A DNA stretch of 64,000 nucleotides from Takakia lepidozioides. Taxonomy: Eukaryota > Plantae > Bryophyta. The notes under the pieces were generated by a model. It ran no database searches. It was not told the DNA's origin and saw nothing but the letters and a program-made list of their open reading frames with translations. The stretch lies in the NCBI GenBank assembly GCA_030704615.1, contig CM060734.1, forward strand, positions 8,618,001 through 8,682,000. The letters are read 5' to 3'. This document shows positions 5,814-36,349 of this stretch, piece after piece (positions within the stretch are counted from its first letter, which is position 1; every line of letters begins with the position of its first letter). Both the position numbers and the translations under genes were made by a program.

Positions 5814-6726
5814 TGTTGAGCGGTTTTTACTCACCCATCCCTTAGCTATCTGGGGTGAAAACTCTAGGTTAGAAAAGTTAGAAATCTGCAAATACTCAGC
5901 TCGCACTGAACAATCAGTCATGACCCACACCTAGTGTATCATGAGGGTGGTTTCCTATATCTATTCTTTCTTGCATTCATGTTTAATAAGTTACCCGACT
6001 GTCTAAGATTAAGTATCAGATTGCTTCTGCAATCTACTAAGTTCCATCTTTACAACTTAAGCATACATTCCACAGCTTCACTAAGTCTCTCTAAAAAGAG
6101 TGAGTATGAAATAAGAATCGTATTAATAACTATAATGTATCAGGCCCAGCCATGGTGTCTCTATTTTGCCCTACAGTACATCTCCACAAGTTGCATGTAT
6201 CAAACTTCATCAGATCGTCTCTCCTCCTCCGTGTGCTCCAAGATCGTGCTATAAGAAGTAATCCCCTCCATGTAGCTACTCTGCATAATGTATCTGCACG
6301 TTGTTTTAGCTGCTTAACTAATTAACTGTCAGCCAAGACAGTACGTAAGTACTATCGTTCCCTATGTTGATGATGTTCCCGTATTCTCGTTCCCCGCCAG
6401 TGAGAACAGTATCTTGTGACTTGTGTCGGCTGTGTCATGTGGTGCTGTGACGGACTGTCTCGACTGTGTGCTGTGTCGGGATGGTCAGCTGTGTCGGGCT
6501 GTGAACTGTGTCGGGTTGTAACTGGCTGTGTCGGGCTGTAACTGTGACGAACTGTGACAGACTGTGATAGGCTGTGTAAGCATGTGACTGCTGACTGTGT
6601 GAGCCTGTGTCTGCCACCTCTAAGGCCTATGCTGGTCTGAGTCTGCCACACCTTAAGGCCTGCGCAAAATTAAGGGTACCCCACAGAACCCATAAAACTG
6701 TCTAAGTCCCAGACAGCCCTGTAACA
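5814..6726 (-). repeat. 3' LTR of a Gypsy element (extra-ORF family), copy 1
   Basis: The minus strand reads TGTTACAGGG...GCTCAACA, preceded by a polypurine tract (6730-6748). It is homologous to 40112-40756 and contains internal TGTGTC/CTGTGA short repeats. Confidence 0.85.
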
Positions 6727-6749
6727 TTATCCCCCCACCTCTCAAAAAG

Positions 6750-8699: not shown

Positions 8700-9268
8700 G
8701 GACAAGGCGTACATGGCGACCATGTTCTTCTTCATTTTATGAAAATATCAAAATGTGATTGAAATAGATGACTACAAAGTCATCTAAAAATTCTCGAAAT
8801 ATGTCATTCATAATGTGTTGAAAAATTGTTGGAGCATTTGTAAGACCGAAAGGCATAACACTGTATTCGAAATGTCCGTACTTTGTGCGAAAAGTAGTCT
8901 TCCATTCGTCTTCTTCTTTTATTCGTACAAGGTTGTAAGCTCCTCTCAAGTCGATCTTTGTGAAAAAATTTGCACGTCCAAGTTGTTCGAGGAGTCCGGA
9001 AATCAGCGGTAGTGGGTAACGATTTTTTATAGTGACTTTGTTGAGCCCACAATAGTCCACACACATGCGTAACGATCAGTCCTTCTTCTTCACAAATAAG
9101 ATAGGTGCTCCCGCAGGTGATTTTGAATGTCAAATGAAATTCTTTGACAAATTTTCATCAATGTATTCGCGTAAAGCAGCCAGCTCCGTCTGAGATAAAT
9201 TGTAGATCGGGCCGAATGGTGGTTGAGCTCCTTCTTGCAACTCAATTGCACAATCATAAGGTCGATGT
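8700..9268 (-). mobile_element. Ty3/Gypsy chromovirus-like (Tcn1/Tf-like) reverse transcriptase fragment
   Basis: [21 protein letters not shown]...[43 protein letters not shown]; the YxDD motif is degenerate and the fragment is truncated on both sides. Confidence 0.9.
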
Positions 9269-9597
9269 CATCGGGGGGTTTTTTTTTTTAAACTTTTTTA
9301 TACCTGTCTTGCCCCGTATTTAGGTCCTGTCAGATGAAGTCATTTTTTCATCCAGGTTGGATTGAAAAAACTGACGGGAGTTTTGCAATCAGTATATTCC
9401 AGTTTGATGTTCGGATGAAGCAAAAAACCTCACAGGTATTTAGTGAAGAAATGTTTCACTAGGGAAAAAATGTATTTTGGATGAAAAACATCCAAAATTC
9501 CCTGCAACCCAATTTTTTCAATTTTTTTAAAAATGGAAGTCGGGACAACAATTCCATAAACCCAGTTTCGAGAGGAAGAGAGAGGGAGAGAGAGGGA
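9269..9597. repeat. ~330 bp direct repeat (module end), near-identical to 12776-13109
   Basis: Both copies run from CATCGGGG-polyT-AACTTTTTTATACCTGTC through to the GAGAGAGGG tract with only scattered differences. Confidence 0.95.
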
Positions 9598-9628
9598 ATC
9601 CCACCATCCAACCCTTGGTATGGCAGGC

Positions 9629-9679
9629 CCTTACGGAGTGAGTGTGGTATGCACTCACCCCGTAAGGGAGTGCATACCA
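9629..9679. other. Conserved 51-nt two-state hairpin, copy 1
   Basis: CCTTACGGAGTGAGTGTGGTATGCACTCACCCCGTAAGGGAGTGCATACCA, identical to 18399-18449. Confidence 0.9.
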
Positions 9680-9997
9680 AACTCCTTCTCCAAAAAGGTA
9701 ACTTCTCCCTGCTCATTAGCAAATCCTTTGGAAGGTGTACCATAGAGGATTATCAAGCTATCCCTTATTCAATCTGGGTAATCAGAACAAGCATATGAAA
9801 TCGAGCATATTGCTAGGGTATGTACTAAGCATAGACCCCAAAAGGAACTAGTTATTGAAGAAATCACAGGTGTAAGAAACCACGGTATTTACTTACTCTG
9901 GTTTTTTGTGAACTCCACCATCACAAGCATATCTATTTTCAAGGAAAAGGACACACCATATTTAGGCTGTCAAAAATCACACCCAAGCGCCGACATT

Positions 9998-10411
9998 TTT
10001 GTGTGGTGCTACAAAGAGCGAAGCCACATCCAGGAGAAGCCAAAAAGCATGTGAGCCGAAGACCAACTAAATTTTGACATAAGGCATTGGCTACAGGGGA
10101 TCAGTTAGCAAGAACGATGTACAGTGACCGGATCATGTAGAAGGTGTGTACATATGCTCCAGTAGATTGTCTTACCAGGGCCTAGCTCATGATATCAACA
10201 TTCAGGGGTCTGTTTGTGTGGTGCTACTAAGAGCAAAGCCACATCTAGGAGAAGCCAAAAAGCATTTGAACCGAAGACAAACTAAATATTGATATAAGGC
10301 ATTGGCTACAAGGGACAGTTAGTAAGAGTAATGTACAGTGACCGGATCATGTAGAAGGTGTGTACATATACTCGAGTATACGGTCTTACCAGGGCCTAGC
10401 TCATAATATCA
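9998..10411. repeat. Tandem duplication, two units of ~215 bp
   Basis: TTTGTGTGGTGCTAC...CTTACCAGGGCCTAGCTCAT occurs at ~9998 and ~10214. Confidence 0.9.
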
Positions 10412-10679
10412 TAATTTATAAGTCTGTTATGCCCTGTGCTTATCTATTCTCCATGCCCAAACCATTGGTCTGCTGGAAAAAAAACATACCTGGTATGAAC
10501 CATGGTTGCACAGCTTGAATAACAAGGATTGGAGGAAGCAGCCGGAGCTAGTACCGCAAGGTCTGCAGCTCATCAATCCATTCCGGAGTGATCTTGGTGG
10601 GGTTCTGCACAAAGGCTGGAAAATCAGCATGGTAATCGATGGATAGTGCATGCAGAAACCACTAAGCATACTGGACACT

Positions 10680-12047
10680 GAGAGAGGGAAGATACTTTTT
10701 GTCATGTCAAGACAAGGTCAGGACCCCTAGGGTCGTTGTCATGAAAGAATAATCAGACATATCAGCCACTTAACAGTGGCACCATCCATCAATCATCAAG
10801 CTTAGAAAATCCAGAATTACATCCATGCACAATAATGTGTTCATGTCAGTATTATTCATAACCCAAAGAATATGCCACTGATGTTGATTGACCACCAGTC
10901 ATGATCATGATACACATTCAGAGGTCTGGGTGGGATGGCGGGTACTTGGCCATATTTTGGCCTTGATGTGTTGCAGGTCAAATGGTCATACAGATTTACT
11001 GTCCACAAGCTGTAATCCAAGCATACTTACTCAAACCCCATGGGTGTCATGGAGGGTTTTTCTTCCAAAACAAAAAGAACAAGAAGAACACTTGGACATC
11101 ACAGATTTAAATATCTTGCCCTGCCAGTATTTGTTTAGACTGGTTTGCAGCACAGCTTGCCCCCACAGGGGAGGTGGATATGTCTGGTAAGTTTTCCAGA
11201 ATACCCCTATACCTTTATTTCTTGCTACAGCTGAAAATCAAAGTTCGTGACCCAGCAAGGTAAAGATAAAGGACTGCATGCACATCATGTGACAGTATAT
11301 AATACTGTCAGTACATCCTATTCACATCATTCCACATTTGACCATGTCATTACACCATGTCCAGGGGGTATTTCCACTTGACCACCCTGGCTGCCTCAAA
11401 AACCAGTTACCAGTTATATATTGCTGCCATATTTCATTGTCAGCGGAATATCCACAGGCAGAATCTTCACCATACCCTGGCCTAAGCATCTAGCTAACAA
11501 AGCCATCCGGGTTGGAACATAACAGGGGCCAACATGGGTACCCGAATAGCTGCAACAAACAGTTCATTGCAGCCTCTCAAATTGTTTCCAACTACCATAA
11601 GGTAAGCAAAGCAAACTAGGGCCTGGAAAACAGATGTGTGTCTCTCACACAAGCCATCATAAACCCGACTGTCACAACAAAGCAGAGGTCTTCCATTGGC
11701 TGGGCCGAAAATAGCCCATCGAAGAAAGCCTTACACTTGTTCTTCAAAAATAAAGGAAGGAAAGAGGTAGGATCAAGAAAAACCATAGAGTAATTTAGTT
11801 TTTCAACATTTTAAGATGAGTCCCTGGCAAGCGATTCCTTCCCCTGCTCTGCAATCCCACTTAGCATCCAGCAGCACCTAGACATCAGAATATTGAGTGG
11901 AAGCCCTCACCTATGCCCGTCCCAAAAACAACCACAACGTATTGTGAGTTAGTGAGGATGCACGAGGTGAGTAGCAGGGTTCCACACTTGCTATCGAGGT
12001 CAAATACACTTCAATCTAAGCGCAGAGAACGCCAAAGAAAGCAGGGA

Positions 12048-12097
<50 letters not shown>

Positions 12098-13140
12098 TTT
12101 TACTGTTTGGGGGAGAGTCGTCATCTCTCCACAAGCGTAACCGTGCAGGGAGGACTCCGCCAGCACCATAGCACTGCTACCTGAACCAAAGCAAAGTCTT
12201 GCCAAGCACAAGAAAAAAGAGCTTGGTCTCAAAAGGTAGGGTTTATAAAGGGAGGGAGAGAGACTTCCTTGTTCTACCAAGACGCCGCCATTCATCAAAG
12301 ATCCATAGGAGGGCTCCTAAGGAAACATCATAAGCATGCAGGTGGTACCTCCGCCATCACTGCCGCGGTTCCCTTGTGCAGCAAAAAAACAGACAACAGA
12401 GACAGTGAATCTTCCCTCATCTCTAAGCCACTGCCATCGCCATCGCCTTAAAGAGCCCGCCTAGGCGGCGCTCAAAGGAGCCATAAACACTCAAGGATTG
12501 GCAGCTCAAGGTATCTGCAGCACGAGCACCATCGCTCCTCCCAAGCCGCCATCGCGCGCACTCTCGCAGCGCAAAAATAAAGACATTAGGGTTGCGCAGG
12601 GTTTTCCCCTGTCTGGCCCGTCATTCATCTTTCTCAGGATGAAAAACATCCGCCAGCCTGTACGTCCGACGGACGTTGTCCATTTCTCATTCGCGGAAGA
12701 TGAGAGACATCGTGCGTTCATCCTGTCTTGAACTCGACGGATGCAATCCGCTTTTCATCTAGGTTAGATGAAAAACATCGGGGTTTTTTTTTTTTTTTTT
12801 TAACTTTTTTATACCTGTCTTAGCCCCGTATTTAGGTCCTGTCAGATGAAGTCATTTTTTCATCCAAGTTGGATTGAAAAACTGACGAGAGTTTTGCAAT
12901 CAGTATATTCCGGTTTGATGTTCGGGATGAAGCAAAAAACCTCACAGGTATTTAATGAAGAAATGTTTCACTAGGAAAAAAATGTATTCTGGATGAAAAA
13001 CATCCAAAATTCCCTACAACCCAATTTTTTCAATTTTTTCAAAAATGGAAGTCGGGACAACAATTCCATAAACCCAGTTTCCAGAGGGAGAGAGAGGGAG
13101 AGAGAGGGAGAGAGAGAGGGAGACAAAGGGAGAGAGGGGG
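10680..13140. mobile_element. Non-coding module 1 of the RT-associated array (orientation A)
   Basis: Starts GAGAGAGGGAAGATA..TGTCATGTCAAGACA, has the shared core at ~11900-12030 (CCCTCACCT..GTTAGTGAGGATGCA), a CATCC/GGATG array at 12620-13005, and ends in GAGAGAGGG repeats. Confidence 0.75.
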
Positions 13141-13239
13141 CAACAAAGAAAAAACAAAAGGGGGGGGGGGTGAGTGACTAAGCAGCAGCTACTCAGTCAC
13201 TCCCCCCCCACCTTCCTCTTTTTCTTTTTGTTTCCTGAT

Positions 13240-16200
13240 CTCTCCCTCTCACTCCCTCTCTCTGTCCCTCTCTCTCCCTCTCTCTCCCTCCCTCTCTCCC
13301 TCTGTACATGGATCCTGTTGGTAACCTATTCCATAACCCAGAGGGTTTGGTACTAAGGTAATTTTTGACTAAACCCTAATTAACTTTCTGCTATCTTCAT
13401 CCATACCGGATGTAGTTAATAATGGATGAATTCCATTAAATGTTAATTCTGGTTATCATTTTTTACCTGGTTCCTTTGGATTATTAAGGTCATTTATATC
13501 TAACCCTAATGAATGCCAGTTTCTGGTCATCGATTTTAGGATGTCATCCATGCTGGATGACATGGCGATGACAACAGGGGAATATTCACCTTTCATTCCT
13601 TATTTTTCATCCGACATGGATGAAATCGCAATGGTTTGCCATATCTCCTCTCCTGCCATAAAACTTGCACGATACTCATGCGTTTTCTCTGCGGGAGATG
13701 AAGTGATGGTGTCAGAGGGATCTCTTAGCATGAATTTTATGATTTTGATGGCTATGGAGACGCTTCAATGCTGCTTACAAGTACTCTGGCAAGATTCCAA
13801 TCCTTTCTCATCTCCCTTGGGATGCGTAACGGCGGCAGTGCTTCAATTCCCTCAGTATGGTGGCCTATTCCCTTGGCGGGCAATCTACCTTAGGCTGCCC
13901 GATTGCTTGTCGATCCTCTCTGGATCATTAAGTTTCAACACCGCTCATAAAAACTCAGGGGGTTTCTTCACCTGTTAAAATGCGCATAGATTTCAGCAAA
14001 CCATTGCTTGTTTGTGCTGTTGATTGTCAAGTGCTTGGAGCGATGTCGAGTCCTCTTCCGCAATCGATTAAGGTTGTGGATAACCCTGTTTGTGTTTAGA
14101 ATCGATTCTTGCTTTAGAACTCATGTTGTACAGCGATAACAAGCGTGAGACCCGATTCACCTGGGGTTCTACAATTCTCACTAACATGTTGGTTCTTGTG
14201 GGGGCTTGTGATGGGACCAGGTGAGGGTCCTCACTTAATGTGATTTTTGAAGCTTGAATCTGATGACAAACCTGCAAGTGAAGTGACATCGACATCAGCT
14301 GATTATCCAGGGAGATGTCTCATTTTTGCCTCCCTACCTTGACCAATCTGGATATGCTTACAACCTTTATCTTTGTGTTGAAGCAGCAAGTGCATTAGTG
14401 AGCCTTTTTAGAACACATGAATTCTATTAAGGACTCTGGGTTATGATTTCCGCTGCATTGAAATATGGTACTGGAAGTAGGGTTTCCAGACCAAATATAT
14501 GCTCTTTTTTCATGCTTAGAGCACGATTTGCTGCTCTGATATGTACACTTTCAAGCAACACGGTAGGGGAGAGGTCAGAGCTTGCATCTGGTTTGTACTA
14601 AGCCTTGTATGCCTTTATGTGCTCAATCTATGGAACCTCTGTGGCTTTCTGAACCCCCTTTCCTTTTTTTACCTTGCATACAATCTGCTAAGGTAAGTAA
14701 CTTGCTACCTCTTCATGTCACTCTGTAATTACAGATTGTATACAGTTGTGTTTATGGTTTTTGGGTTACAATAAAAGACCACAGGACTCACTGTTTCTGC
14801 TCTGACATTGAATGATGCCTAGAAGCACAAGAAACATGGACTGGTGGGGACCCATAATTACTCTTCTAAAAGCAAGCTTTTGTTTTTCTAGAAAAACATG
14901 TACTGGCTTTATAGACTCTTGGTTCCAGAAGGTTGGGTTGGATTGAAGATATCAGCTGCTTTGATATCTGGCAACACAGCCCTTTTTTTCAGATGTTATG
15001 ACTTCAAAACCAGTGTAACATTGGGGTTTGAACATGTATTGGCACTGTAGCCTTTCTGAACTTCATTAAAATGTCTTTTTTACCTTGCAAACACCTTGTT
15101 AAGGTGGTAACATAATGACCCCAGACCTAAACCAGGTCCTGGTGTTTGAAGAAAAGCCTCTTCTGTTGCTTGATGACCAAAGAATGATTAACATCATACT
15201 TACCAGCATGGCTCTGGATTTTATGATTACAAAAAAGACTGTTGTTTGTTTGATTTTTCTGGCTATGGCTGGTTTTGATATGACATGGCATTGCATTTGT
15301 TTTGTTCTAAGGCCCTGTACGCCTTTATGTACTCATACTATGGAACATCTATGGCTTTCTGAACTCCATCTGTGTTTTTTGTACCTTGCATACAATCTGC
15401 TAAGGTAAGTAACCTGATGTCATCAGGCCTAAACTAGGCTCTGGATATGATTCTTGTTAATCTGTAATTACAGATTATAAACAGCTTGTTTATGGCTTGT
15501 GGGTTACAAAAAAAAGAACACATGACTCACTATTTCTGCTCAAGCATGATTGATGCCAAGACACATAAGAAACATGAGTTGGTGGGGACCCATAATCGAG
15601 CTCTTCTAAAAACCCTCCAAGCTTTAGTTGGGTTAGATTAAATGATTTCAGCTACTCTGGCTTGATAAAAATATCAGGCTACACAATATAATTTTTTCAG
15701 ATGTTATCGATTCAAAACCTGTGTAACACCAGGGTTTGAACAAGTGTGGGAACTATGGCCTTTCTGAACTTCATTAAAAGTCTTTTTTGCCTTGCAAACA
15801 CCTTTTCAAGGTTGTAACATAATGACCCCAGACCTAAACCAGGTCTGGTTGTTTTAAAGAGAAGCCTCTGTTGTTGCTTGGTAATCGAAGACTGATTAAC
15901 AATCATACCTACAGCATGGCTCTGGATTTTATGTTACAAAAAAGATAGCTATTTGTTTTTTTGCTAGCTATGGCATATTTTGATACAGAACACTGCAGTA
16001 GAAAGCAGTTCTGGGAAATCAAGCTTACTAAACAATGCAATGAGTTTTGACTCTATGTCATGATTACAAGAAGTTCTAAAAATGTAGCAGATAAGCTCTG
16101 GGCTGTTGTTATTAAAAAACTGGTTATCTTATCAAGTAACCAGATGATTTAATATCCCGGTTGTGTGATTAATGGAAAATTACTGGAACTTTTGGGTTCC

Positions 16201-16564
16201 AGATGAGCAGTACTATTGCATGATATAGGTAAACATTTAATTGTTTGCTTAGATGCCACCCATAGCTTATAATTCTAAAACAGGCATAAAAACAGGCTGG
16301 TAACACTTGTTTAGCATACTGTTCCTTAGAATATAAAGCTGGATTATTATAACGAGGGGGTCTTCTAAGTAATCCCACCCTCCCACCCGTATTTTCTTGT
16401 CTTTGAAATGTAATGGAGGTCATCATAAGATCTGATTTGAAGTGGAGTTTGACTGATAATGCCTCTTCATGAGGTTGATTTGTCGTAAAAATTGACAATG
16501 ACCATGTTTGGTCTTGTCCATGTCCCGACAAGACATAGTATCTTCCCTCTCTTTCGTGCTGCTC
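13240..16564. mobile_element. Non-coding module 2 (orientation B, inverted relative to module 1)
   Basis: CCCTCTCT tract, CATCC array at 13398-13628, reverse-complemented core at 14070-14240, a ~700 bp internal tandem duplication (14600-15990), and an end of GACAAGACA..TATCTTCCCTCTCT..GTGCTGCTC. Collinear with 21920-24540. Confidence 0.8.
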
Positions 16565-16614
16565 ACAAAAAAAAAAAACACAAAGGGAAAGAGGGGGTAG
16601 AAAAAAGTTAATAA

Positions 16615-18368
16615 GAGAGAGGGAAGATATATATGTCATGTCAAGACATGGACAAGACCGCTAAGGTCATTGTCATTGAAAGACAAAACAGCCCTTTACA
16701 GGGCACCATCTAACATTCCCTTTCATGTTTACAATCTCATTTGAATACCCCATTACATTTCAGGGTCTCTGAAAAAACAGGGCGGGAGGGTGGGATTCCA
16801 GGTCATTCATATCATGAAAGCACCATAGTATGCATCATCATCTCAAAAATTCATTTCAAACTCATTTCAAAAACCAAATTGCAGGTTTGGTTTGAAGATG
16901 ATGTTTTAGAACCAAGATATAAGCAAGATTCTTAAAAAGAAAGAAGAAACAAAAGGGTAGAGCCCCCTTAAGCAGGTATAGGCCTAGAATGGTATTTTAA
17001 GGCCTCATAAAATAGTTCTGCCAAGGTGAAAGAGCAGCTCAGAAACCCGTGTTTGTTATCAAGCCATGAAACCAAAATGATATGAGGGCCTTGAAGAATG
17101 TGTGTTATCTATCAAAGCCTATCATTTTGATCCATCAGAGTCATACCAAGAAGTTTCATTTCAGAGCCAAGTATCAAGGCAGTTAGAGTAATAACTGCTA
17201 TTTTGTATCATTGTATCCTTCATAGCTTAACTCCTACACATGCAAATGTGGTTGTAAAAAACCAGAAACAGGGGTAAGGAGAGAAGCAGATCCTCATTGG
17301 AGCCATCTTGGAGCAGGTCTGAAGCGGTATGGTGGCAGTTTGAAACAGTAGATGGCATCAGCAGCATAGGCAGCAGTAGAATCCACATTTGCAAGAACAG
17401 GAGCTGCAAGCTTTCAAGAAATCAAGACAAGTGAAGACCCTCACCTGTGCCCATCCCAAAAACCACCACATAGCGATGTGTGTTAGTGAGGATGCAGCAG
17501 GTAAATGGCAGGTCCTCACAGTTGCTATCCATGTCAGTGTTGAATTCTAAAGCAAGTACAGATCACAATTCAAGCAAGGGTAAACTCAAAAACCTTGAGT
17601 GTTTGTGGTATGCCCTGCGCCATGGCATCCAACAGATCGTCTCCAACAGAACGCAATCAGAGTAGAAGCGTTCACAGATAGAGAATGGCTCATACACAAA
17701 GAGAGAGCAACATGTAATCTATAGATAAATAGGGATAGAGTACTTCCCAACAAGGAGTAAAAGCGCCGCTGCAAAATAAAGAACCATGAGTTTCTGATCA
17801 AAGCGATCACCGCTTTGTCGTTTGCCAGAGAAGAATCTGTTTAACCACCAATGCGCATCCCAAGAGCCAGCCATCACGAGTACCATGTAGCAGCAGGGGA
17901 GCAGGTTTATACGGCGCATCATCAAGGTTCACTGAAGCACGAGTTCAGTGCTGTGAAGTGTGTCAGCCTGCTTAGGGCAAAACTTCCCGATTTTTCATCC
18001 AGGGTGGATGAAAAATCACATTTTACCAAGAGAGGCACCTGGTCAATGGATGACATCCCATAGAAATGTATCTTTTAGGGTTATGGTATAGGCTTAGGTT
18101 TAATAACTGCCATCATTTATGATGGTAGTTTTATTATTCTCTTGGATTTTATAATAGGTAACCATTATTTATGTAGATCATCCAGTTTAGATGAAAGAAA
18201 TAGATGGTAAATCCAGCTTTCTGTACATTAAGTTTCATCACCCTATAATAAAATCATCCAAATTTGGATGAAAAAGGCTGGGATGAAAAACTTAATAACC
18301 TCAAAAGGTTAAGGTCAGATGAAATCCAAAGAGTTATAGAGGGAGAGGGAGAGAGGGAGAGAGAGGGA
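16615..18368. mobile_element. Non-coding module 3 (orientation A)
   Basis: Same start motif as module 1, core at 17430-17600, CATCC array at 17990-18330, ending in GAGAGAGGG repeats followed by the 51-nt hairpin. Confidence 0.8.
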
Positions 18369-18398
18369 CCCACCAGCCAATCCCCTGGCATGGTTGAA

Positions 18399-18449
18399 CC
18401 TTACGGAGTGAGTGTGGTATGCACTCACCCCGTAAGGGAGTGCATACCA
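18399..18449. other. Conserved 51-nt two-state hairpin, copy 2 (downstream of the RT stop on the minus strand)
   Basis: Identical to 9629-9679 while the immediate flanks diverge. Confidence 0.9.
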
Positions 18450-18641
18450 GACCTCTTCTCATAAGGTTTTCCCTCTTCCATGTAGTTCTATCCTCAGATT
18501 ATATTATCCAAAGGAGTAGAATCCTACATCCTCACTTCCTCGGATCAAGAATGAAACGATGGCAGAAAATGTATCATAGCAAAACTAGTATAGTATCACT
18601 AGAAAAGAACAGAGAGTTCAATCTTAGCTCTGTATAAGTTT

Positions 18642-20986
18642 TTAGAAAGTACCTTTCAGTTTCTCAATAAGCTCTTGTACAGGGAAGAGCAGGCCAGGGA
18701 ATGAACCACGTTCAAGGAATTTTGTCAAGATACGAGCAAGTTTTCTGGTCTTGAAACCATTCCTCCCAAGAGTGTTAATCAGAATGCTACACTCCTTCCC
18801 AGCCAAATCAGCATTGCTGGAAATGTATAGAATAGGCACAGCTTGTGAAATCACAATGTTATAAGATTGATTCACAGGCCTATTGGATAAGAACTGGATA
18901 TATTGAGTGTAAGAGAAAGGAAGTACTCTTCTCTTGTCATATTTCTGGAAATGGAACTCACCTGTGTCACTGTTTGAGACTGTAATCTGGATATTCATGA
19001 AACAAGCTTCCAACCCCACGTATTGGGAATCGGTTTTAGTGCGTAGTAGCTCAGGTTTGATCTCCACTACATTGAGTGGGTAGATCCACCAAGGGTTGTT
19101 GCTGCTTCTGTCTGCCCACGGGTCCAGGAATAGCATTGCATCATCCACATTCAGCCAGCATATATCATCAATGTATCTGAAGGCAGATTTAAACATAGGC
19201 ATAAGCTAGAATTGTCCTAAAGCTGCAAGCCTTATTTGATTTCATAAGAAAGGAAGTACATGTTGCACCATAATGGTGAGCATGAAAAACCCATAGGTAT
19301 TCCAGAAATCTGCTACCACACACGGTCCCCTAAGGCGACAAAACAGTGTGACATAAGCCATTTGTGGAGCATAAGTAGCTTGACTTCAGAAAGTTCAATC
19401 CAGGTACCTGATTTCGGGGAAGACGTGCCCCATCTACTTTTTCCGAAAGTACCGTTTTTGGCTGGAATCCATAGAGTATGACGTGCTCGGGGGTGAGACC
19501 GATGGTGTTGCTGGAATGTAATCTTCACCACGTATTCAATGGCGTCCCCTAAGTTATCCTGTCCTGTCAAAGGTATGTTCTCATAGCATTGTGTAATGTC
19601 AGCAACAAAGATGTTATGGACTTTTTCAGGCAGGTTTAGTGTAAAGTCAGTGATGGAGTCAATAATCCAATACATAGCAGTAGATACTTTGAAAAATTGC
19701 TCATAAGTATCCAGCCTTGTCTTGGCCCATTCTTTTACCAATGGTAGAAGATCCATGGTAGCCCTTGTAAGAAGGCTAGCTAGTTCACTGAAAACACATT
19801 TATGGGCATTGGTAATCCATCTGTATTTTTTCTTATGTAGCTTGTAGATTCCCATAATGTAAGGTAGTCTATAGGAGGGAGCAGGTATCTCCGGAATCAG
19901 ACTCTGTATTTCCACGGAAATGTTTCCTAGAACAAGGTCAGGTGGCAGCCATACCTCAGCTTGCTTGCATGGTGTAAAGTCTTTACCCATCAATCTGTGG
20001 AAGGCTTGAGTTCTTATGTGCTTTACACACATAAAACATACGTTTTTGTTAGCCTTGTCAAGACCAGAAAAATACAGGTGATTGAGAAGCCATGAAAGTT
20101 TATCTTTTGCCTCTTTTACAATAAGAGGATTGCGCTCATGGTGAGTGAAGTCATACCTTCCTCTGCCGGCTTTTTGTTTCAATCTATCCCAGCATGTGTT
20201 TTTTACCCATTGGCTGCAGGTTGCGGCCCAAGATTCACATGGGTCTACATGTAAAATTTCACAGGTTCTGTGGAAAGCCAAAGACACTTGTTCAACAACG
20301 TCTTTCAGCAAAGTACGTTTGAGAGGGATGTGATTCATACCTAGGCTGAATAGTTCTTTTAGCCTTGCGTGTCTAATAATATTCAGGTCCATGGTATGTA
20401 CGTGTTGCGTAGGTGTAGAACCAGATAGATGGAATTCTGTTTTTGTATCCACATCCCAAAAATCATGAAACCTCTTGGCACTGTCACATAGACAATCTGG
20501 TGAGTGAATCAGGTCTTGCATAAAGCAAAAATCACGGAAAACAGCAACAGGCTGATAGTATTCAGAGCTGCTTTGTTTATGATATGTCCATCCAAAAACT
20601 ATCTTATCGATGAGAATAGCCAAGTCATTTTGTCCAAATTCCAAAAAAGCTTCTTTTATCAAGTTCCTAGGGTTTATCCACTCCATACCACGGTTTGGGT
20701 ACAACATATGAATGAATCCCAAGGGAGCAGGTTTTGCTGCCTGTTTTATGAATTTCCTGCCATGGGCATGAGTTTCAATTTGTCTGCAACCATCCTCAAG
20801 ACCAAACAACGCATCTGCACATACAAAGTAGAGGAACATACCAAAAATGAGATTTTTAAAGATCTGTCCATGATCCAAAATCTCGTTTGCGTATTGGGGA
20901 GAACTCGTCAGTGATACAACGAGTCTTGTATGACTCCTGGCTGGCGATGTTGATGGTGGTACTGGAATTAGCACCCGAACCCCCAA
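18642..20986 (-). pseudogene. Penelope-like element reverse transcriptase (Naiad/Chlamys-type motifs), no endonuclease visible, disrupted
   Basis: CLC...HVHTMDLNII...LKELFSLG N-terminal motif, DKANKNVCFMC, LPYIMGIYKLHKKKYRWIT, motif A ADITQCYENIP, motif B' QISGIPMGFSCSPLWCNMY (read through the stop at 19313-15), motif C FRYIDDI, then IYP and YDKR thumb motifs. Stop codons and a frameshift lie at ~19210-19315. Confidence 0.88.
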
Positions 20987-21015
20987 GTGATGACCGATTC
21001 GTTGCTCTTGAATTC

Positions 21016-21864
21016 TCAGAGGTGTTGGTAGAGTATTGTCCCCTGCCAGAGCGTCCTCCTCTTTTGGTAGAGACCTCTTCCACGACCAGGGGTGCCTCTG
21101 CCTCGAGTGGCATTGTTCTTGCCTTGTTGAGGAGGCGTCTGCCCCTCCATACGCTGCCGTTTGTAGCTATTGAATTGTGGCCTGGGAAGGCTGTCTGAAA
21201 AAAACCCAGGTTTCACAAGTTTCTCAATGTATCTGGCCCCCTTGGATTCTCCTAACTTCCCAAGCAACTTGGCTTGTGGGTCAATTGAGAATTCACAAGC
21301 TGCTTCCATTATGAAGCCTCGGGTCATCTGGAAGGTAATTTGTGCAAGTACAGCAGATCTGGCAGCCCGCATGATCCACACCAGAAAGCTGTAATACTTG
21401 GTTTGCACCGAAGGATAGGCATCATCAGGGAAGAACACAATCAGATTGTTCAGCATATACCATACCATATGGTCAAACCAAGCAACACTCCCAATGCAAG
21501 AAGAGGGTGCCCCTCCTTGTCCACAGTTACATCTTATGTAGGGACGATGCCAGATGAAGAGTTGACTCTTGTGATTTTTGGATCTGGCCGAACCAGTCGG
21601 CAAGTCATTTTTGGTCCTCAAGGTAAGGTTCTCACCTTTGTCATAGAGCTTGTAGTAGAAGGTCCTTAGTGGCCAATCCACAACAATAGGTTCCTTTTTT
21701 ATTCTCTGAAAACCCTCCTTAGCATCCTGTGCACATCTACTGCGTTCAGCAGGAGTTATGTTGCCCCATTTGACCCACATTTCAATAGAACTGGGTGCCA
21801 ATAAATTGATATTAGCATGTGGGTGCCACATCATGTGGTCGTTATTGGCAACCTCTATTGGCAA
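21016..21864 (-). CDS. Orphan ORF1 upstream of and co-oriented with the PLE-like RT; RG-rich basic C-terminus
   Basis: 282-aa open frame ending ~30 bp before the RT frame. No recognisable domain; RGRGTPGRGRG tail. Confidence 0.65.
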   Translation of the reverse strand: MPIEVANNDHMMWHPHANINLLAPSSIEMWVKWGNITPAERSRCAQDAKEGFQRIKKEPIVVDWPLRTFYYKLYDKGENLTLRTKNDLPTGSARSKNHKSQLFIWHRPYIRCNCGQGGAPSSCIGSVAWFDHMVWYMLNNLIVFFPDDAYPSVQTKYYSFLVWIMRAARSAVLAQITFQMTRGFIMEAACEFSIDPQAKLLGKLGESKGARYIEKLVKPGFFSDSLPRPQFNSYKRQRMEGQTPPQQGKNNATRGRGTPGRGRGLYQKRRTLWQGTILYQHL

Positions 21865-21899
21865 CCTCTAGGAACTTGCTTGTATTTTTTCCAAAACCC

Positions 21900-24540
21900 A
21901 GGACGGCTTGGACTAATTTTGTCTAAACCATATTTTAAATTCATCCATACTGGATGTAATCATGAAAATGGATGAATTCCATTAAAGAATATTCTGTGAT
22001 AGCTGGTATCTTTGGATGATTTTGGTCATGAGAACTAACCCTAATGAAAGCCAGACTATATTTTGGATGCCATCCCTACTGGATGACATCATGATGAAAT
22101 CAGGGAAGTTCTTTACATCTCATTACCTGTTTTTCATCTAATTTGGATGAAATCGCGAAGGTTTGCCCTATCTCTTCCTCCGCCCTTAAACTCTGCACGA
22201 TACTCGTGCGTTTTGATTCTGCTGGAGCTAAGAGATGGTGTCAGAGGGTTCATTTAAACATGAATCTTGTGAATTTGATGGCTATGGAGAAGCTTTATGA
22301 CAGCCTGCAAGTGCTCTGGCAAGATTCCAATACTTTTCGATTCACCTTGGGGTTCCCTCAATGAGGTTGTCTCTTCCCTTGGCGGACAATCTACCCTAAG
22401 CTGTGATTGTTGGTTGATCCGTTCAATGGTCATTAAGATCCAACGCCGCTCTTAAACTTTCAGGAAGTCTCTTCACCTGATAAAATGCTCGTAGAAATCA
22501 GCAAACCGTTGCTTGTTTGTGCTGTCAATTGCCGAGTTCTTGGAACTATGTCGAATCCTCTTCCACAAACCCTTAAGGTTGTGGACTATCTTTGCTTTGC
22601 TTTTGATCTCTTCTTGCTTTTGAACGCATGTTGTACAATGATAACAAGCGTGAGGCCTGATATTCACCTGGGGTTCCACATCTTCACTAACTTCATTGTT
22701 TTTTGATTGCATGTGATGGGTTCAGGTGAGGGCCCTCACTTAATATGATTCATGAAGCTTGCAATTGATTGAAACCTAGCAAGATGAAGTGAAGTCGACT
22801 CAAGCTGTTTCTTCAGGGAGCTGATTCAAATCAGCCCCCATATCTTGATCTTTTTGGCTATGCTTCCAACTCTTTTTGTTGAGCATTAGTGCATTAGATG
22901 AGCTTTATTAGAACACATACTTTTTATTAAAGACTATTGCCTTTGATTTCTGCTACACTACGTGATGGTGCTGGATTTGCTGTTTTACAGCCCAACATGA
23001 GCTTTTGATTTCGGTTTATAGTACTGGTATGATGCTGTGGCTTGAATGATATCAAGCAGCTAAGTAAGAGGACATAGGGAACCCCAACCTTTTGTTTTTA
23101 GGCCATGTATGCTGCCTGATGCAGGCCATTTGGTTTCATGTCCTTCTCTACTTGTTTGTGACCTTGCAAGTACCCTGCTGGAGCAGATACAGATTGCCCC
23201 AAGACCTAAAACGGGCTCTGGGATAGACTGGCTTTATTGCTATGGCATGTACCAAGCAGCACAGTAACCCGAAGGATCTTTTTGAACTCAGACAATATGT
23301 TTAGAGGTATCTTAAGACATCAGGGATTAAGCTCGTACAGACCCTGTATATCTCTCTACACCTCCATGAATGCTTTGTCATATGGTAAACATTTTGCTAG
23401 AGTATATACCTGTTGTACCTGACTGAAGCCAGGGTATGGAACATAATACAATATCTTCTATTGTGTTCCCTATTTACATATTGTTTAGAAATATCTGCAG
23501 ATATACAATGTAACCATAGGTGATGAAATTCAGCAATCTGAAGACTTGCCTCCCTGCTTTGCACAGTGGTAAAGTAGCAACATGTATAACTGGTTGCTAC
23601 TCAACACCTTGTTACCATATCTATACAATGACCCAAGCCTAAACCAGGTCTTGGCGCCAAAAAAACGAGGTATGATGTCATACCACTTACGTGTAAATGT
23701 TGTACAAGGTTGTCTGCTGCTTTGATATGGCCATGAGATTACATAAAAACTAGAATTTCCTTTCCAGACTGTCAATGTAATCATGGGGAGTAAATCTAGC
23801 AAGGTGAACAAGAATTTCTGCTTTGAACTGTTGCTAATGTCACATTTAAAACATACACAGACATGGGATACATTACTGGGTCCCTGTTTGGATGAACATT
23901 AATGTGACTCAAATAGTGAGGCGGATCTTTATGTAGGAGGCCATATGGTGTGCCAGCCATTGGGCTCTAGGCCAAGTATGTTGTTTACTGCAGGCCCTAT
24001 GTTTTTCTGGATTTCTTTTCAGTCTGTGATAATCAGTAATCACTTGCTGCTCAAAACCTTTTGAATCCACTTATACACTGGCCCCAGACTGAAACCAGGT
24101 CTTGGGGCAAAAAACAAGATGTGTGGACATTCCCTTCATGTGTAAATGGTTTAGAAACTGTTTACTGCTCTAATCTGGCCATTATATTATATAAAAATTG
24201 GAACTTCTTCTCCAGTTTATTAATGTGAGCATGGGTGGTAAACTTAGCAAGATAAACATGATCTTCCTGCTATGAACTGTTTCTAATATTCCATCTGAAG
24301 CATACCCTTGATTGGGTCCCTGTCTGTCTGAAGCGGATTTTTATATAATCCCACCCCCCCCACCCAGAGATTTCATGAACCGTGGGATCTGTTATATATC
24401 ATCAGACTGGTTTATGAATGAAGAGTGATTGATAGTGCCTCGTTATGAGGCTGATTTGTCGTAAAAATTGACAAAGACCTTGTTTGGTCTTGTCCATGTC
24501 TCGACAAGACATTTTATCTTCCCTCTCTTCTGTGCTGCTC
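21900..24540. mobile_element. Non-coding module 4 (orientation B)
   Basis: Collinear with module 2: CATCC array at 21940-22155, core at 22570-22745, terminal motif at 24437-24540 ending GTGCTGCTC. It has an internal duplication (23620-23900 vs 24080-24340). Confidence 0.8.
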
Positions 24541-24990
24541 TCTTTTAAGCTCCCGACGAGATAAATTCAAGGTCAGATGGTGGGTTCAGCTGTAATATAT
24601 GTCCAACACCAGATATCCTAAGTTAATCGACTCTATATCTTGGAAACATGACCGCCCTGTCAAACAGGGTAAGCCCTGGGAGAAGAGAGTAGAAGAGATT
24701 CTCAAGGATCTAAATCTGGACCCGCAAGTCTTGACCTTGCTGGATAAACCTGACTTAGAGAGTGTAGTGTCCAAAGCCATGTCTGTTACCAGAAAATTGT
24801 CCGATGAAAATGAAGTTAGGAAGAAAACTTCCCTGAACTTGTTTCCAGTGTGTGACATGGGGGAGGACATCATGGATGCGCTCAAGGGTCTATCCCACTC
24901 TTGGCACCACACCTAAATTTAAACTCAGGGTAGGAAGACTACCTTTGAACTGTAAACAGAAGCAGAGAGGAAAGGGAGAGTGCAATTTCC
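24541..24990 (+). mobile_element. Non-LTR retrotransposon (RTE-X/LINE-like) post-RT C-terminal fragment
   Basis: SRRDKFKVRWW.QL..MSNTRYPK...W..RV..IL...KFKLRVGRLPLN resembles the region between the RT and the terminal zinc finger. Confidence 0.5.
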
Positions 24991-26019
24991 CTGACGTACC
25001 TCTGCTGCTGCGGCTGATGCTTGAAGCGAGCTGCTGCGGTGCTGTCGCGGCTGCCAGCGGCGCGGGTCCCCGCCGCTGCAGGGCGTCTCTCCCCCGCTCA
25101 CCACGGCTCTCTCTCTCTTCAGCTCGTTTAGGTCGCGCCTCTGCGCGGCGTTCCTACCACACAGGGGAGAGAGACATCAGCCCGTGCTTAGGGCAAGAAA
25201 GCAAGAGAGAAAGTGAGGGAGGAGGCGGTGCTTACCTTGGGCGTTGGAGCGGCATTGGGGCAAAATCCTTGGGGCCTTGTGACCACCTCAGCAGCAGGTG
25301 CGTTTCTCCTCCACCCTAACCTCACTCTCTCAACTACCTCTCTCCCAAAGAACAAACGAAAATGGGAGGGGAAAGAGATGCTTCAAGCACTTAGGGGAAA
25401 AAAAAGGCGCGGCGCCTACGTGAGACGCCCGGCCGTCACACGCCTGCGCTCCGCCCTTTTTTTGAAATGTAAAAATGATATTTGCGACGGCCGGCCGTCC
25501 TTGCTTGCGACCCCCGGCCCCATAAATAAATAAATAAACACGTCGCCCCCCGCGACGGCTTTCCGTCGCGGGGTGCGACCCCCAGGTAAAAAATTGAAAA
25601 AACTCGTCGTCAAATGCGACGCGAGGGTGTCGCAGGAGGCGACGGCCGGCCTTTCTGGGTTTAGGGTTTAGGGCCTTTTGGGTTTCTTAGTTTTTATTTT
25701 ATTATTATTATTTTTCATATGGTACTGGGTTAGGGTGTTTGCTTTTCTTTATGGTGCTGGGTTTTGGTTGTGGGTCTTGGGGTTAAGAGGATAAATGGTG
25801 TAATTAGGATTCCCATACCCAAAATGTGGTTCAATCTGATAATCGCAAAGCGCTGGGTCTCAACGAATTTTTCCATGGTGTGGGCATCCTGAAGATAGAA
25901 CGAGAGGAAGGATTTATTGTCTTGGGCTCTAGCACCATAGGGATGCTCCGCCTTTGGTTACCAATTTTGAAAGTCCCGAGGCTGAGGCATAGGGTTTTTT
26001 TGCCAACGGTTTTTGAGAA

Positions 26020-35719: not shown

Positions 35720-36340
35720 TTGGGATTTGATCACCGGCGTCGCATTTGCGTCGCAGCGGTGACGTCGCAGAAATCCGCGCTTAAGGCGACGCCAGGGGGG
35801 TCACACAATGCACCCCCGGGACTCCAGGGTTTGCGACGCTACGGGTCGCTACCACCCGCGACACCCTCGTCGTCGCAAAGGGGGGGAGCGTGAGGTGCAA
35901 GGAACGCGACACTCCGAGCGTCGCATCGGAAAGCGACGTACTGTGCGTTGCTCCCGCATTGCGTCGTCCCTTCCGTCGCCGTTTTCGTGTGGCTGATTTT
36001 ATTTTGTGTTTTTAAATAAAAATGTATATTAAAATCTATTTTTGTTATATCCATTATTGCGACACCTACTGCATCGCAGTAAGAATGCGACATTTTTTCA
36101 CCTTTTTTAAATCAAATTTATCTTTTTCAAGCTGCTCGCATGGGCGACACCTTTCGGGTAATTGTTTTTTTTTTTTTTTTTTTTTTTTTTTTCCTATCGA
36201 GTTATTGTGATTTTTTCTTTTTTTCTTTCGGGTGCCCCTCCTGCGGCACCAGGGACGTCGCATATGAACTATGACGCTTACGGGAGCCCAATGGGTGTCT
36301 CCTTGTGCGACGCATCGCAGTAAACCTACGACGATTGTGG
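35720..36340. repeat. CACTA-type subterminal repeat fragment (TGCGAC/GTCGCA array)
   Basis: Same motif density as 25400-25650 and 32650-33250; no terminus or coding region seen. Confidence 0.6.
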
Positions 36341-36349
36341 GGGGGGATC

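What the first reader, a model, noticed from the sequence alone, without database searches (positions are those of the whole stretch)
9269..24540. Candidate new mobile system: endonuclease-less Penelope-like RT embedded in an array of alternating non-coding modules joined at GAGAGAGGG
Seen: four homologous but diverged non-coding modules in A,B,A,B orientation (10680-13140, 13240-16564, 16615-18368, 21900-24540). Pair 1+2 flanks only a palindrome, while pair 3+4 flanks a hairpin plus ORF1 and RT, which looks like a non-autonomous and an autonomous version side by side. GAGAGAGGG/CCCTCTCT occurs at nearly every module junction, and no TSD or transposase is evident. Established: EN-deficient PLEs (Athena/Terminon type) prime on exposed G-rich repeats using complementary 3' RNA ends and form chains with palindromic junctions. 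Inference: this may be an analogous plant system that uses a non-telomeric GAGAGAGGG primer repeat and mobilises partner non-coding RNAs. The alternative is a foldback-like element with long diverged arms carrying an RT.
Basis: partly seen in the sequence, partly recalled or inferred. Interest (0 to 1): 0.85.

Follow-up and report, generated by a model that had tools for sequence, protein, structure and literature searches.

The report
Nuclease-less Penelope-like retroelement cluster in moss
This 15-kb stretch is a pile-up of telomerase-related jumping genes of an already described plant group (PLE-X) that have no DNA-cutting enzyme, together with non-coding hitch-hikers; the pieces are joined at the elements' own short repeat, which hints at how such elements find a landing site.

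Summary
GAGAGAGGG occurs 19 times in the window against 0.4 expected, and 14 of these sit at module edges.

It is not a new system. The RT has a telomerase-like fold. It carries the CxC and DKA motifs, a long motif A-B spacer and no GIY-YIG. Its ORF1 has a CxC-X8-C motif. This fits the endonuclease-less "PLE-X" branch of Chlamys Penelope-like elements (Craig et al. 2021), except that no hammerhead ribozyme was found. Other follow-ups of this scan reached the PLE-X reading on other DNA of this genome.

The modules are pseudo-LTR regions of at least three diverged subfamilies, in direct and inverted arrangements typical of PLEs.

Three things go beyond the paper:
- All lineages keep a covarying stem-loop, a G-rich box and a lineage-specific pyrimidine microsatellite after the RT.
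- A non-coding neighbour shares the 51-nt stem-loop core exactly.
- Joints fall at the microsatellite in two lineages with different repeat units.

Priming on matching purine-rich DNA ends is plausible but unproven.

The parts
9269..9597 (-). A0': first ~320 nt of a pseudo-LTR-like module. It is the downstream partial repeat of the non-autonomous element alpha and abuts a Ty3/gypsy RT fragment at about 9268.
   Evidence: 95.6% identical to 12790-13109. The gypsy RT at 8737-9066 hits RVT_1 at 2e-18. Sequence read.
9578..9596 (-). Microsatellite (CCCTCTCTC)2 of alpha, read on the sense strand (GAGAGAGGG on the + strand).
9600..9690 (-). 3' stem-loop plus G-box (CCAAGGGTTGGATGGTGGG) of alpha. The 51-nt core is identical to that of the RT copy.
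   Evidence: (z -5.8)
9691..10679 (-). X: non-coding body of alpha, sitting where ORF1 and the RT would be. It includes 215-bp tandem repeats at 9998-10428. Its first ~30 nt resemble the sequence that follows the module end in other genomic copies.
   Evidence: loose ends at 16552 and 16616; no match to A or B
10680..13140 (-). A1': pseudo-LTR-like module of alpha. It is bracketed by one CCCTCTCTC at 10680-10688 and by (CCCTCTCTC)n at 13090-13138. The conserved box is at 11896-12002.
13084..13290 (.). Palindrome with its centre at 13187. It is a head-to-head joint of the repeat-proximal ends of A1' and B1.
   Evidence: (I1: 103-nt arms, 81% complementary)
13240..16572 (+). B1: an inverted, strongly diverged homologue of the A module (subfamily gamma). 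The repeat is at 13240-13303, the box at 14035-14261, an internal ~710-bp duplication at 14582-15985 and the terminal inverted block at 16371-16572. An A13 run follows.
16573..16614 (.). 42-nt A/G-rich filler between the tail-to-tail ends of B1 and A2'.
16615..18368 (-). A2': pseudo-LTR-like module downstream of the RT copy. The terminal block is at 16615-16797, the conserved box at 17402-17632 and the microsatellite at 18340-18367.
   Evidence: Many variant contigs in DNA runs lie on it.
18369..18460 (-). 3' stem-loop plus G-box (CCAGGGGATTGGCTGGTGGG) of the RT copy beta.
   Evidence: (z -4.4)
18642..20986 (-). Penelope-like (TERT-like) RT of Chlamys/PLE-X type. Motifs: CxC (DCLCDSAKRF), DKA, motif A ADITQCYENIP, motif B GIPMGFSCSP, motif C YIDD. 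It is broken by TAG at 19313-19315, a frameshift near 19232-19238 and TAG at 19206-19208.
21016..21864 (-). ORF1 (282 aa). It has the CNC-X8-C...WFDH core, a KRQR stretch and an RG-rich tail. It lacks the first ~156 residues found in relatives, and in some gene models of relatives the ORF1-like part is fused to the RT.
   Evidence: No known fold.
21865..24545 (+). B2: second gamma-type inverted module, head-to-head with the 5' end of ORF1. The box is at 22533-22763 and the terminal block at 24347-24545.

Best explanation
The stretch is a cluster of endonuclease-less Penelope-like retroelements of the PLE-X (Chlamys-related) kind.

Shown: what the parts are.
- Beta is a slightly decayed, 5'-truncated autonomous copy on the minus strand: ORF1, RT, 3' stem-loop, G-box, (CCCTCTCTC)n, then pseudo-LTR module A2'.
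- Alpha is a non-autonomous copy on the minus strand: repeat, A1', non-coding body X, the same stem-loop and G-box, repeat, then partial A0'. Its two pseudo-LTR pieces are 95.6% identical.
- B1 and B2 are two solo pseudo-LTR modules of a third subfamily, in the opposite orientation. They lie head-to-head with alpha and beta.

Shown: what is conserved.
- The modules are the family's own pseudo-LTR region, and its conserved box follows the RT in other lineages.
- The 3' stem-loop covaries across lineages.
- The microsatellite always follows the G-box, but its repeat unit differs by lineage.
- In this window the joints between elements fall at or next to the repeat.

Inferred: how it works. The RT recognises the stem-loop in cis and in trans, which lets non-coding RNAs that carry the stem-loop be copied. 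The pyrimidine repeat of the RNA pairs with a purine-rich DNA 3' end supplied by the host (a nick, break or fork in a matching microsatellite, or in the repeat of a resident copy). That end primes reverse transcription, so no endonuclease of the element's own is needed. Repeated use of the repeat as a priming or template-switch site would produce the tandem, head-to-head and tail-to-tail chains.
For: RT identity.
- A Foldseek search of the family model puts 17 TERT structures on top (E 9e-7 to 7e-3), ahead of group II intron RTs.
- The CxC, DKA and YIDD motifs are present, and motifs A and B are about 98 residues apart.
- ORF1 carries CNC-X8-C. ORF1-like N-termini are fused to the RT in gene models of relatives.
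- Pfam finds no GIY-YIG in the window's ORF1 and RT pieces, in five full-length relatives or in 17 long family members.
- These features match the PLE-X description in PMC8557442.

Modules belong to the element.
- The box at 17439-17536 recurs 0.65-1.25 kb after the RT stop in L002, L009, L011 and L014.
- Relatives stand as tandem units or carry flanking direct repeats.

Stem-loop.
- Fold z-scores are -4.4 to -5.8.
- 86.6% of cells are paired against 69.6% in shuffles, and 10 of 17 pairs show compensatory changes.
- The 51-nt core is identical in alpha and beta, while their flanks cannot be aligned.

Microsatellite.
- It sits after the G-box as (CCCTCTCT)n here, (CTT)8 in L002, (CT)n in L008-L011 and L014, and (T7A)n in L001.
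- The module is bracketed by the lineage's own repeat here and in L002/L003.
- The L003 array breaks exactly at (CTT)11.
- GAGAGAGGG is enriched 45-fold.

Abundance. DNA-run contigs show 11-31 variant contigs per site on A2 and the stem-loop, against 1-7 on the RT.
Against: - No canonical hammerhead ribozyme was found (Rfam at E up to 5), although PLE-X families are reported to have one.
- The two outer edges of the cluster (9269 and 24545) are not at microsatellites, and no empty site was available.
- No RNA evidence was obtained: no run on record as RNA holds the stretch, and the contigs cannot show RNA ends. Whether transcripts end at the first or the second repeat is therefore unknown.
- A and B arms of one unit are only 67-72% alike. 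The inverted pairs therefore cannot have been made from one RNA in one event.
- Why the same subfamily (B1, B2) sits head-to-head with two different elements is unexplained.
- Contig depth is not a copy number.
- No phylogeny against named PLE-X references was run.
Confidence: 0.6

Rival explanations
1. The elements are PLE-X copies, but the layout is mostly secondary. Ordinary nested or adjacent insertions in a transposon-rich region were later rearranged by recombination, replication slippage or hairpin-mediated deletion at the repeat and at inverted repeats. On this view the microsatellite is just an unstable polypyrimidine tract with no role in priming, and integration depends on an unidentified host or element nuclease.
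For: - The modules are old and diverged (67-79%).
- The outer edges are not at microsatellites.
- A gypsy fragment is cut without its other half nearby.
- Palindromes and GA-rich tracts are known fragile sites (general knowledge).
- ORF1 has no known fold, so a catalytic role cannot be excluded.
Against: - The repeat keeps a fixed place after a conserved G-box in every lineage, although its unit changes.
- Joints fall at the repeat in two lineages with different units.
- Chlamys and Naiad elements have a documented insertion bias for microsatellites (PMC8557442).
Confidence: 0.22
2. Telomerase-like chain addition. Each RNA ends at the repeat that follows the stem-loop, and the A and B modules are separate non-coding RNAs with the repeat at both ends. 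Every addition would regenerate a G-rich 3' end, so chains would grow unit by unit at a free DNA end.
For: - The A modules carry the repeat at both ends.
- The tail shared by alpha and beta (stem-loop, G-box, repeat) is what an RT would recognise at an RNA 3' end.
- The part from the stem-loop through A2 draws many more variant contigs than the RT.
- The RT fold is closest to telomerase.
- EN-less Athena and Coprina elements work this way at telomeres (PMC8557442).
Against: - Sequence downstream of the repeat is conserved with the RT across lineages, both the box and a hairpin just after the repeat in L008, L009 and this window.
- In other genomic copies the module runs on into X-like sequence past the single motif (loose ends).
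- The locus is interstitial, with other transposons on both sides.
- Neither a ribozyme nor any other RNA-cutting signal was found at the repeat.
Confidence: 0.12
3. The A/B inverted pair is a foldback or other DNA-level transposon (or a DIRS-like element with inverted or split repeats), and the RT is cargo or a later insertion at its centre.
For: - The arms are long and inverted, with better-conserved ends of 110-200 nt.
- One RT-less unit (A1+B1) has only a central palindrome and would look like an empty site.
Against: - No transposase or tyrosine recombinase was found in any ORF tested.
- The RT has a TERT-like fold, and Pfam finds no RNase H in its ORFs, so it is not DIRS-like.
- The arms' conserved box travels with the RT in four other lineages that show no inverted arms.
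- No target-site duplication was seen.
Confidence: 0.04

Closest known systems
PLE-X families: the endonuclease-less subclade of Chlamys Penelope-like elements (Chara braunii, Selaginella; Craig et al. 2021, PMC8557442)
   Same: - CxC motif ahead of the RT.
- DK(A) motif.
- Long motif A-B spacer, at the position of the IFD.
- No GIY-YIG.
- An N-terminal extension or ORF1 with CxC-X1-8-C, probably joined to the RT by splicing.
- A plant host. The paper already notes strong BLASTP hits in mosses.
   Different: - No canonical hammerhead ribozyme was detected here.
- A covarying stem-loop, a G-box and a lineage-specific pyrimidine microsatellite follow the RT. I did not find these features in the parts of the paper I read.
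- There is no rDNA target.
- The pseudo-LTR modules are very long (1.7-3.3 kb).
- Non-autonomous partners are present.
Athena, Coprina and Terminon endonuclease-less PLEs at telomeres
   Same: - No endonuclease.
- A C-rich repeat on the RNA that is complementary to G-rich DNA, placed next to a structured RNA element near the 3' end.
- Chains of elements separated by short repeats.
   Different: - The repeat is not telomeric, and its unit changes from lineage to lineage.
- There is no hammerhead ribozyme.
- The RT carries the Naiad/Chlamys markers.
- The locus is interstitial.
Canonical EN+ Penelope, Naiad and Chlamys elements
   Same: - Pseudo-LTRs in direct or inverted order.
- Partial tandems.
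- An inverted truncated copy at the 5' end.
- A short extra tail at joints.
- Insertion bias for microsatellites.
   Different: - No GIY-YIG endonuclease.
- A two-ORF layout.
- The inverted arms come from different subfamilies, not from one insertion event.
LINE/SINE pairs that share a 3' tail, and LINEs with microsatellite tails
   Same: A non-coding partner keeps the autonomous element's 3' stem-loop unchanged, and a short tandem repeat follows it.
   Different: - The RT belongs to another class.
- The shared tail is followed by a long module instead of lying at the very end of the genomic copy.
DIRS and Ngaro elements (inverted or split direct repeats)
   Same: An A/B-type repeat layout around an RT.
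   Different: - No tyrosine recombinase.
- No RNase H.
- The RT fold is closest to TERT.

Membership tests
Penelope-like elements (TERT-related RT) | RT closer to telomerase RT than to other RT classes | tested here: met
   Foldseek against the PDB puts TERTs at ranks 1-17 (E 9e-7 to 7e-3), with group II intron RTs next. TM-scores are low (about 0.26) and the model's mean pLDDT is 66. No phylogeny was run.
Penelope-like elements | Pseudo-LTRs, partial tandems and inverted copies | tested here: met
   A0'/A1' are direct repeats at 95.6%. L002 and L003 are tandem units with a 5450-nt period. L020 and L022 have flanking direct repeats. Inverted B modules sit at the 5' sides.
Naiad/Chlamys clade | CxC motif N-terminal to the RT, and a DKA/DK motif | tested here: met
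   The window has DCLCDSAKRF and GLDKANKN. The family consensus has CICxSSKRF and GLDKASNN.
Naiad/Chlamys clade | IFD-like insertion between RT motifs A and B | tested here: inconclusive
   About 98 residues separate the motif A Asp from the motif B Gly. That is longer than usual, but it was not aligned to reference IFDs.
Naiad/Chlamys clade (EN+ members) | N-terminal GIY-YIG endonuclease | tested here: not met
   Pfam finds no GIY-YIG in the window's ORF1 and RT pieces, in five full-length relatives or in 17 long family members.
PLE-X (EN-less Chlamys subclade) | N-terminal extension with CxC-X1-8-C, probably separated by an intron | tested here: met
   ORF1 has RPYIRCNCGQGGAPSSC. ORF1-like segments are fused to the RT in P0057, P0061, P0086, P0154 and P0161. 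The splice itself was not shown.
PLE-X | Canonical hammerhead ribozyme | tested here: not met
   The Rfam gathering scan of the window and the E<=5 scan of 9000-25500 on both strands give no hammerhead.
PLE-X | Groups with PLE-X1_sTam and the Chara families in an RT tree | not tested
Athena/Coprina/Terminon | Reverse-complement telomeric repeats plus a hammerhead ribozyme at the 3' end, and a location at chromosome ends | tested here: not met
   The repeat is CCCTCTCTC, not telomeric. There is no hammerhead. Other transposons flank the cluster inside the 64-kb window.
DIRS-like elements | Tyrosine recombinase and RT with RNase H | tested here: not met
   No such domain was found in any ORF of 80 aa or more that was scanned.

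The most novel reading that the evidence does not exclude
The conserved stem-loop (a possible two-state switch), the G-box and the lineage-specific pyrimidine repeat together act as a telomerase-like primer-alignment unit. With it, an endonuclease-less, TERT-related RT could attach its own RNA, and non-coding partner RNAs that carry the same unit, to any purine-rich DNA 3' end inside chromosomes. Chains would then grow unit by unit. This would be a non-telomeric counterpart of Athena/Terminon addition, and it would answer how PLE-X elements integrate.
Probability: 0.3. Interest if true: 0.8.

Novelty: new variant of a known kind. Interest (0 to 1): 0.5.

Why it matters
Craig et al. (2021) left open how PLE-X elements integrate without an endonuclease. 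This locus and its relatives give a concrete, testable cis-apparatus: a covarying stem-loop, a G-box and a repeat whose unit changes with lineage. They also give a natural non-autonomous partner with the identical stem-loop core, and joints at the repeat in two lineages. If pairing between the repeat and DNA ends is what primes reverse transcription, it would link telomerase, telomere-bound Athena elements and interstitial retrotransposons through one mechanism. It would also explain the microsatellite bias of the wider Naiad/Chlamys clade. If it is not, the locus is simply a decayed nest of a known transposon group.

Tried and rejected
- Pfam on the RT pieces and ORF1 gave nothing. Full-length relatives gave only weak RVT_1 hits.
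- Sequence searches of the PDB, with single sequences and with a profile, gave only chance hits.
- Rfam gave no ribozyme. The many miRNA-like rows are the GA/CT palindrome.
- No further module, ORF1 or RT copies lie elsewhere in the window.
- I looked for the other half of the interrupted gypsy element to the right of 24545, to define an insertion site. Nothing recognisable was there.
- L001's long direct and inverted repeats looked like further inverted arms. They are more likely LTRs of another element, so I did not use them.
- The ORF1 model was tested for a nuclease fold. Foldseek gave E>1, and the wide VIA search gave a best Z of 3.6.
- No run on record as RNA holds the stretch, and the two runs guessed to be RNA are kept only as contigs. 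Expression, RNA ends and the ORF1-RT splice therefore could not be tested.
- The reading of the modules as a foreign foldback transposon was rejected, because the box travels with the RT in other lineages.
- I did not build a spliced ORF1-RT protein. The two parts were searched separately.

Full report
**What is in the sequence.** On the minus strand lie ORF1 (21864-21016, 282 aa) and an RT (20986-18642). The RT reading frame is broken by two in-frame TAG codons (19315-19313 and 19208-19206) and one frameshift near 19238-19232. I placed these breaks by comparison with the consensus of 23 full-length relatives.

- B1 and B2 are collinear at 72-77%.
- A1 and A2 share only three short blocks.
- With a more sensitive search, A and B prove to be inverted, strongly diverged homologues. 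They are collinear over four blocks: a terminal block, a box, a 44-nt block and the repeat-proximal end.
- A fifth piece, 9279-9597, is 95.6% identical to the repeat-proximal end of A1.
- The hairpin at 18382-18460 recurs at 9612-9690.

GAGAGAGGG occurs 19 times in the window against 0.42 expected, and 14 of the hits lie at module edges. The palindrome at 13084-13290 has 103-nt arms. None of the 15 ORFs of 80 aa or more that I scanned from the stretch carries a transposase, recombinase or nuclease domain.

**What the RT is.**
- The 557-aa RT piece finds 44 relatives at about 40% identity on short eukaryote-like metagenome contigs.
- A profile search of 1.84 billion representatives finds 4875 relatives.
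- Pfam sees only a weak RVT_1 hit.
- A family-based AlphaFold model (mean pLDDT 66) matches 17 telomerase RT structures first and group II intron RTs next.
- The protein has a CxC motif (DCLCDSAKRF), a DKA motif and YIDD, and about 98 residues between motifs A and B.
- ORF1 is conserved next to the RT in most related loci at 31-39% identity. Its core is RPYxRCxC-X7-8-CxGx3WFDH, followed by KRQR and an RG-rich tail.
- In several gene models of relatives the ORF1-like part is fused to the RT.
- No GIY-YIG domain was found in the window's ORF1 and RT pieces, in five full-length relatives or in 17 long family members.

These are the features Craig et al. (2021) give for the endonuclease-less "PLE-X" subclade of Chlamys elements in Chara and Selaginella. 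That paper also notes strong BLASTP hits in mosses, and it leaves open how the group integrates (PMC8557442). One reported feature is missing here: Rfam finds no hammerhead ribozyme, even at E up to 5. Other follow-ups of this scan reached the PLE-X reading on other DNA of the same genome. I came to it from the paper and the motifs before I saw those notes.

**What the modules are.** A 100-nt box inside A (17439-17536 in A2, 11905-12002 in A1, and inverted in B1 and B2) recurs 0.65-1.25 kb downstream of the RT stop in L002, L009, L011 and L014. These are four other lineages of the family.
- L002 and L003 are head-to-tail units with a 5450-nt period at 95-98% identity.
- L009 and L011 have identical contig ends, and L020 and L022 have diverged direct repeats around the RT.

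The modules are therefore the element's own pseudo-LTR region, not a foreign foldback transposon.

Read on the sense strand of each piece, the locus contains four elements.
- Alpha (13140 to 9269, minus strand): repeat, A1', a 990-nt non-coding body X, stem-loop, G-box, repeat, and the first 320 nt of A0'. This is a non-autonomous element with pseudo-LTR-like direct repeats. It ends against a gypsy RT fragment.
- B1 (13240 to 16572, plus strand): a solo module of another subfamily. It lies head-to-head with alpha at the palindrome and ends in an A13 run.
- Beta (21864 to 16615, minus strand): the RT copy. It lacks the first ~156 ORF1 residues found in relatives. It lies tail-to-tail with B1 across a 42-nt purine-rich filler.
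- B2 (21865 to 24545, plus strand): the same subfamily as B1, head-to-head with beta.

The RT has only three lesions, while the arms of one "unit" are just 67-72% alike. The A/B pairs therefore cannot come from one RNA in one event.

**Conserved cis elements.** In every lineage with enough 3' sequence, three things follow the RT stop in the same order.
1. A stem-loop. Its 5' strand (YTGGTRKGC) can pair either with the loop of an inner hairpin or with a 3' strand (CAYMCCAR).
2. A G-box (AGGGG-N-GGATGGTGGG).
3. A pyrimidine microsatellite whose unit differs by lineage: (CCCTCTCT)n here, (CTT)8 in L002-L007, (CT)n in L008-L011 and L014, and (T7A)n in L001. L020 and L024 have C/T-rich or T8 tracts instead.

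Both pairing partners change together with the 5' strand: GGTATG/CATACC here, and GGTGGTG with CACCCC and CCACCAA in L011, L013 and L014. The folds score z = -4.4 to -5.8. On a seven-sequence alignment 86.6% of cells are paired against 69.6% in shuffles, and 10 of 17 pairs show compensatory changes. The slid controls score much lower. The structure was derived from the same alignment, so this is support, not proof.

The 51-nt core is identical in alpha and beta, although their upstream sequence and their modules cannot be aligned. That is the pattern of a non-autonomous partner keeping the autonomous element's RT-binding tail.

**Joints at the repeat.** The A modules are bracketed by the repeat, with several units at the RT side and one unit at the far end.
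- The L002/L003 lineage shows the same layout with its own unit: (CTT)8 after the G-box and (CTT)2 about 1.37 kb further on.
- In L003 the array breaks exactly at that second site. There it is (CTT)11, followed by unrelated sequence.
- In the window, all three joints between elements lie at or within about 50 nt of the repeat: the palindrome, the tail-to-tail joint and the ORF1/B2 joint.
- Loose ends of contigs from DNA runs of the organism show that, in other copies, the module runs on past the single motif into X-like sequence. The A2 and B1 ends in this window are therefore truncations at the motif.

**Abundance.** Contigs of a DNA run of the organism give 11-31 variant contigs per site on A2 and the stem-loop, against mostly 1 (at most 7) on the RT and ORF1. 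The summed word depth steps down about tenfold near 18608. The tool warns that this depth is not a copy number, so I take it only as a sign that the module and stem-loop part has many more copies than the RT. No run on record as RNA holds the stretch.

**Mechanism.** The shown parts are the identity of the RT, the nature of the modules, the conserved stem-loop, G-box and repeat, the shared tail, and the joints at the repeat. The rest is inference: that the RT binds the stem-loop, and that the pyrimidine repeat of the RNA pairs with a purine-rich DNA 3' end provided by the host, which then primes reverse transcription. This would fit the documented microsatellite bias of Chlamys and Naiad elements. 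It also resembles, without telomeric repeats or a ribozyme, how Athena and Coprina attach to G-rich overhangs.

ORF1 gives no hint of a nuclease. Foldseek finds nothing below E = 1, and the wide structural search gives a best Z of 3.6. A missing match does not exclude one.

Three points count against the priming reading or remain open. The outer edges of the cluster are not at repeats. It is unknown where transcripts end. The recurrence of the same inverted subfamily next to two different elements is unexplained.

**Verdict.** The value of the locus lies in the cis-apparatus and in the joints, which make the open integration question testable.

Noticed in passing
window 8737-9268 (minus strand): Fragment of a Ty3/gypsy-type RT (RVT_1 at 2e-18), cut at its N-terminal side exactly where the A0' module ends. 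Its upstream half is not on the other side of the cluster.
   Followed up: partly
window 12051-12092: Uninterrupted A42 run (T42 on the element's sense strand) inside module A1, just beside the conserved box.
   Followed up: no
window 9998-10428: Two tandem units of about 215 bp (86-91% identity) inside the non-coding body X of the non-autonomous element.
   Followed up: no
window 14582-15985 and 23594-24305: Internal tandem duplications inside the B modules: about 710 bp in B1 (75% identity) and about 450-bp spacing in B2 (73%). They account for most of the extra length of B over A.
   Followed up: no
window 36000-40000: Strong negative GC skew (-0.42 to -0.44) directly after a stretch of positive skew (+0.14 to +0.21 at 30-36 kb). 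This suggests a strand-biased repeat or an inverted arrangement.
   Followed up: no
L009 (4-120 = 5396-5512) and L011 (1-123 = 6609-6731): Metagenome contigs of related elements have 100% identical ends. The elements are therefore either perfect tandem units or were assembled from circular DNA, and contigs cannot tell which.
   Followed up: partly
L003 5850-5882: (CTT)11 at the point where a tandem array of a related element ends and unrelated sequence begins. The sister contig L002 has only CTTCTT at the same internal site.
   Followed up: yes
L001 1123-3015, 5197-7112 and 18967-19786 (inverted): 1.9-kb direct repeats (95.7%) and an inverted 0.8-kb copy (96%) around a related ORF1-RT element. 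They are probably LTRs of another retrotransposon into which it is nested.
   Followed up: partly
window 17413-17496: Within the conserved box many contigs from DNA runs and possible RNA runs stop matching at the same two points. This suggests an about 85-nt core shared by still more repeat families. It contains ACTAAC followed about 35 nt later by CACAG|GTGAGG, which looks like splice signals.
   Followed up: no
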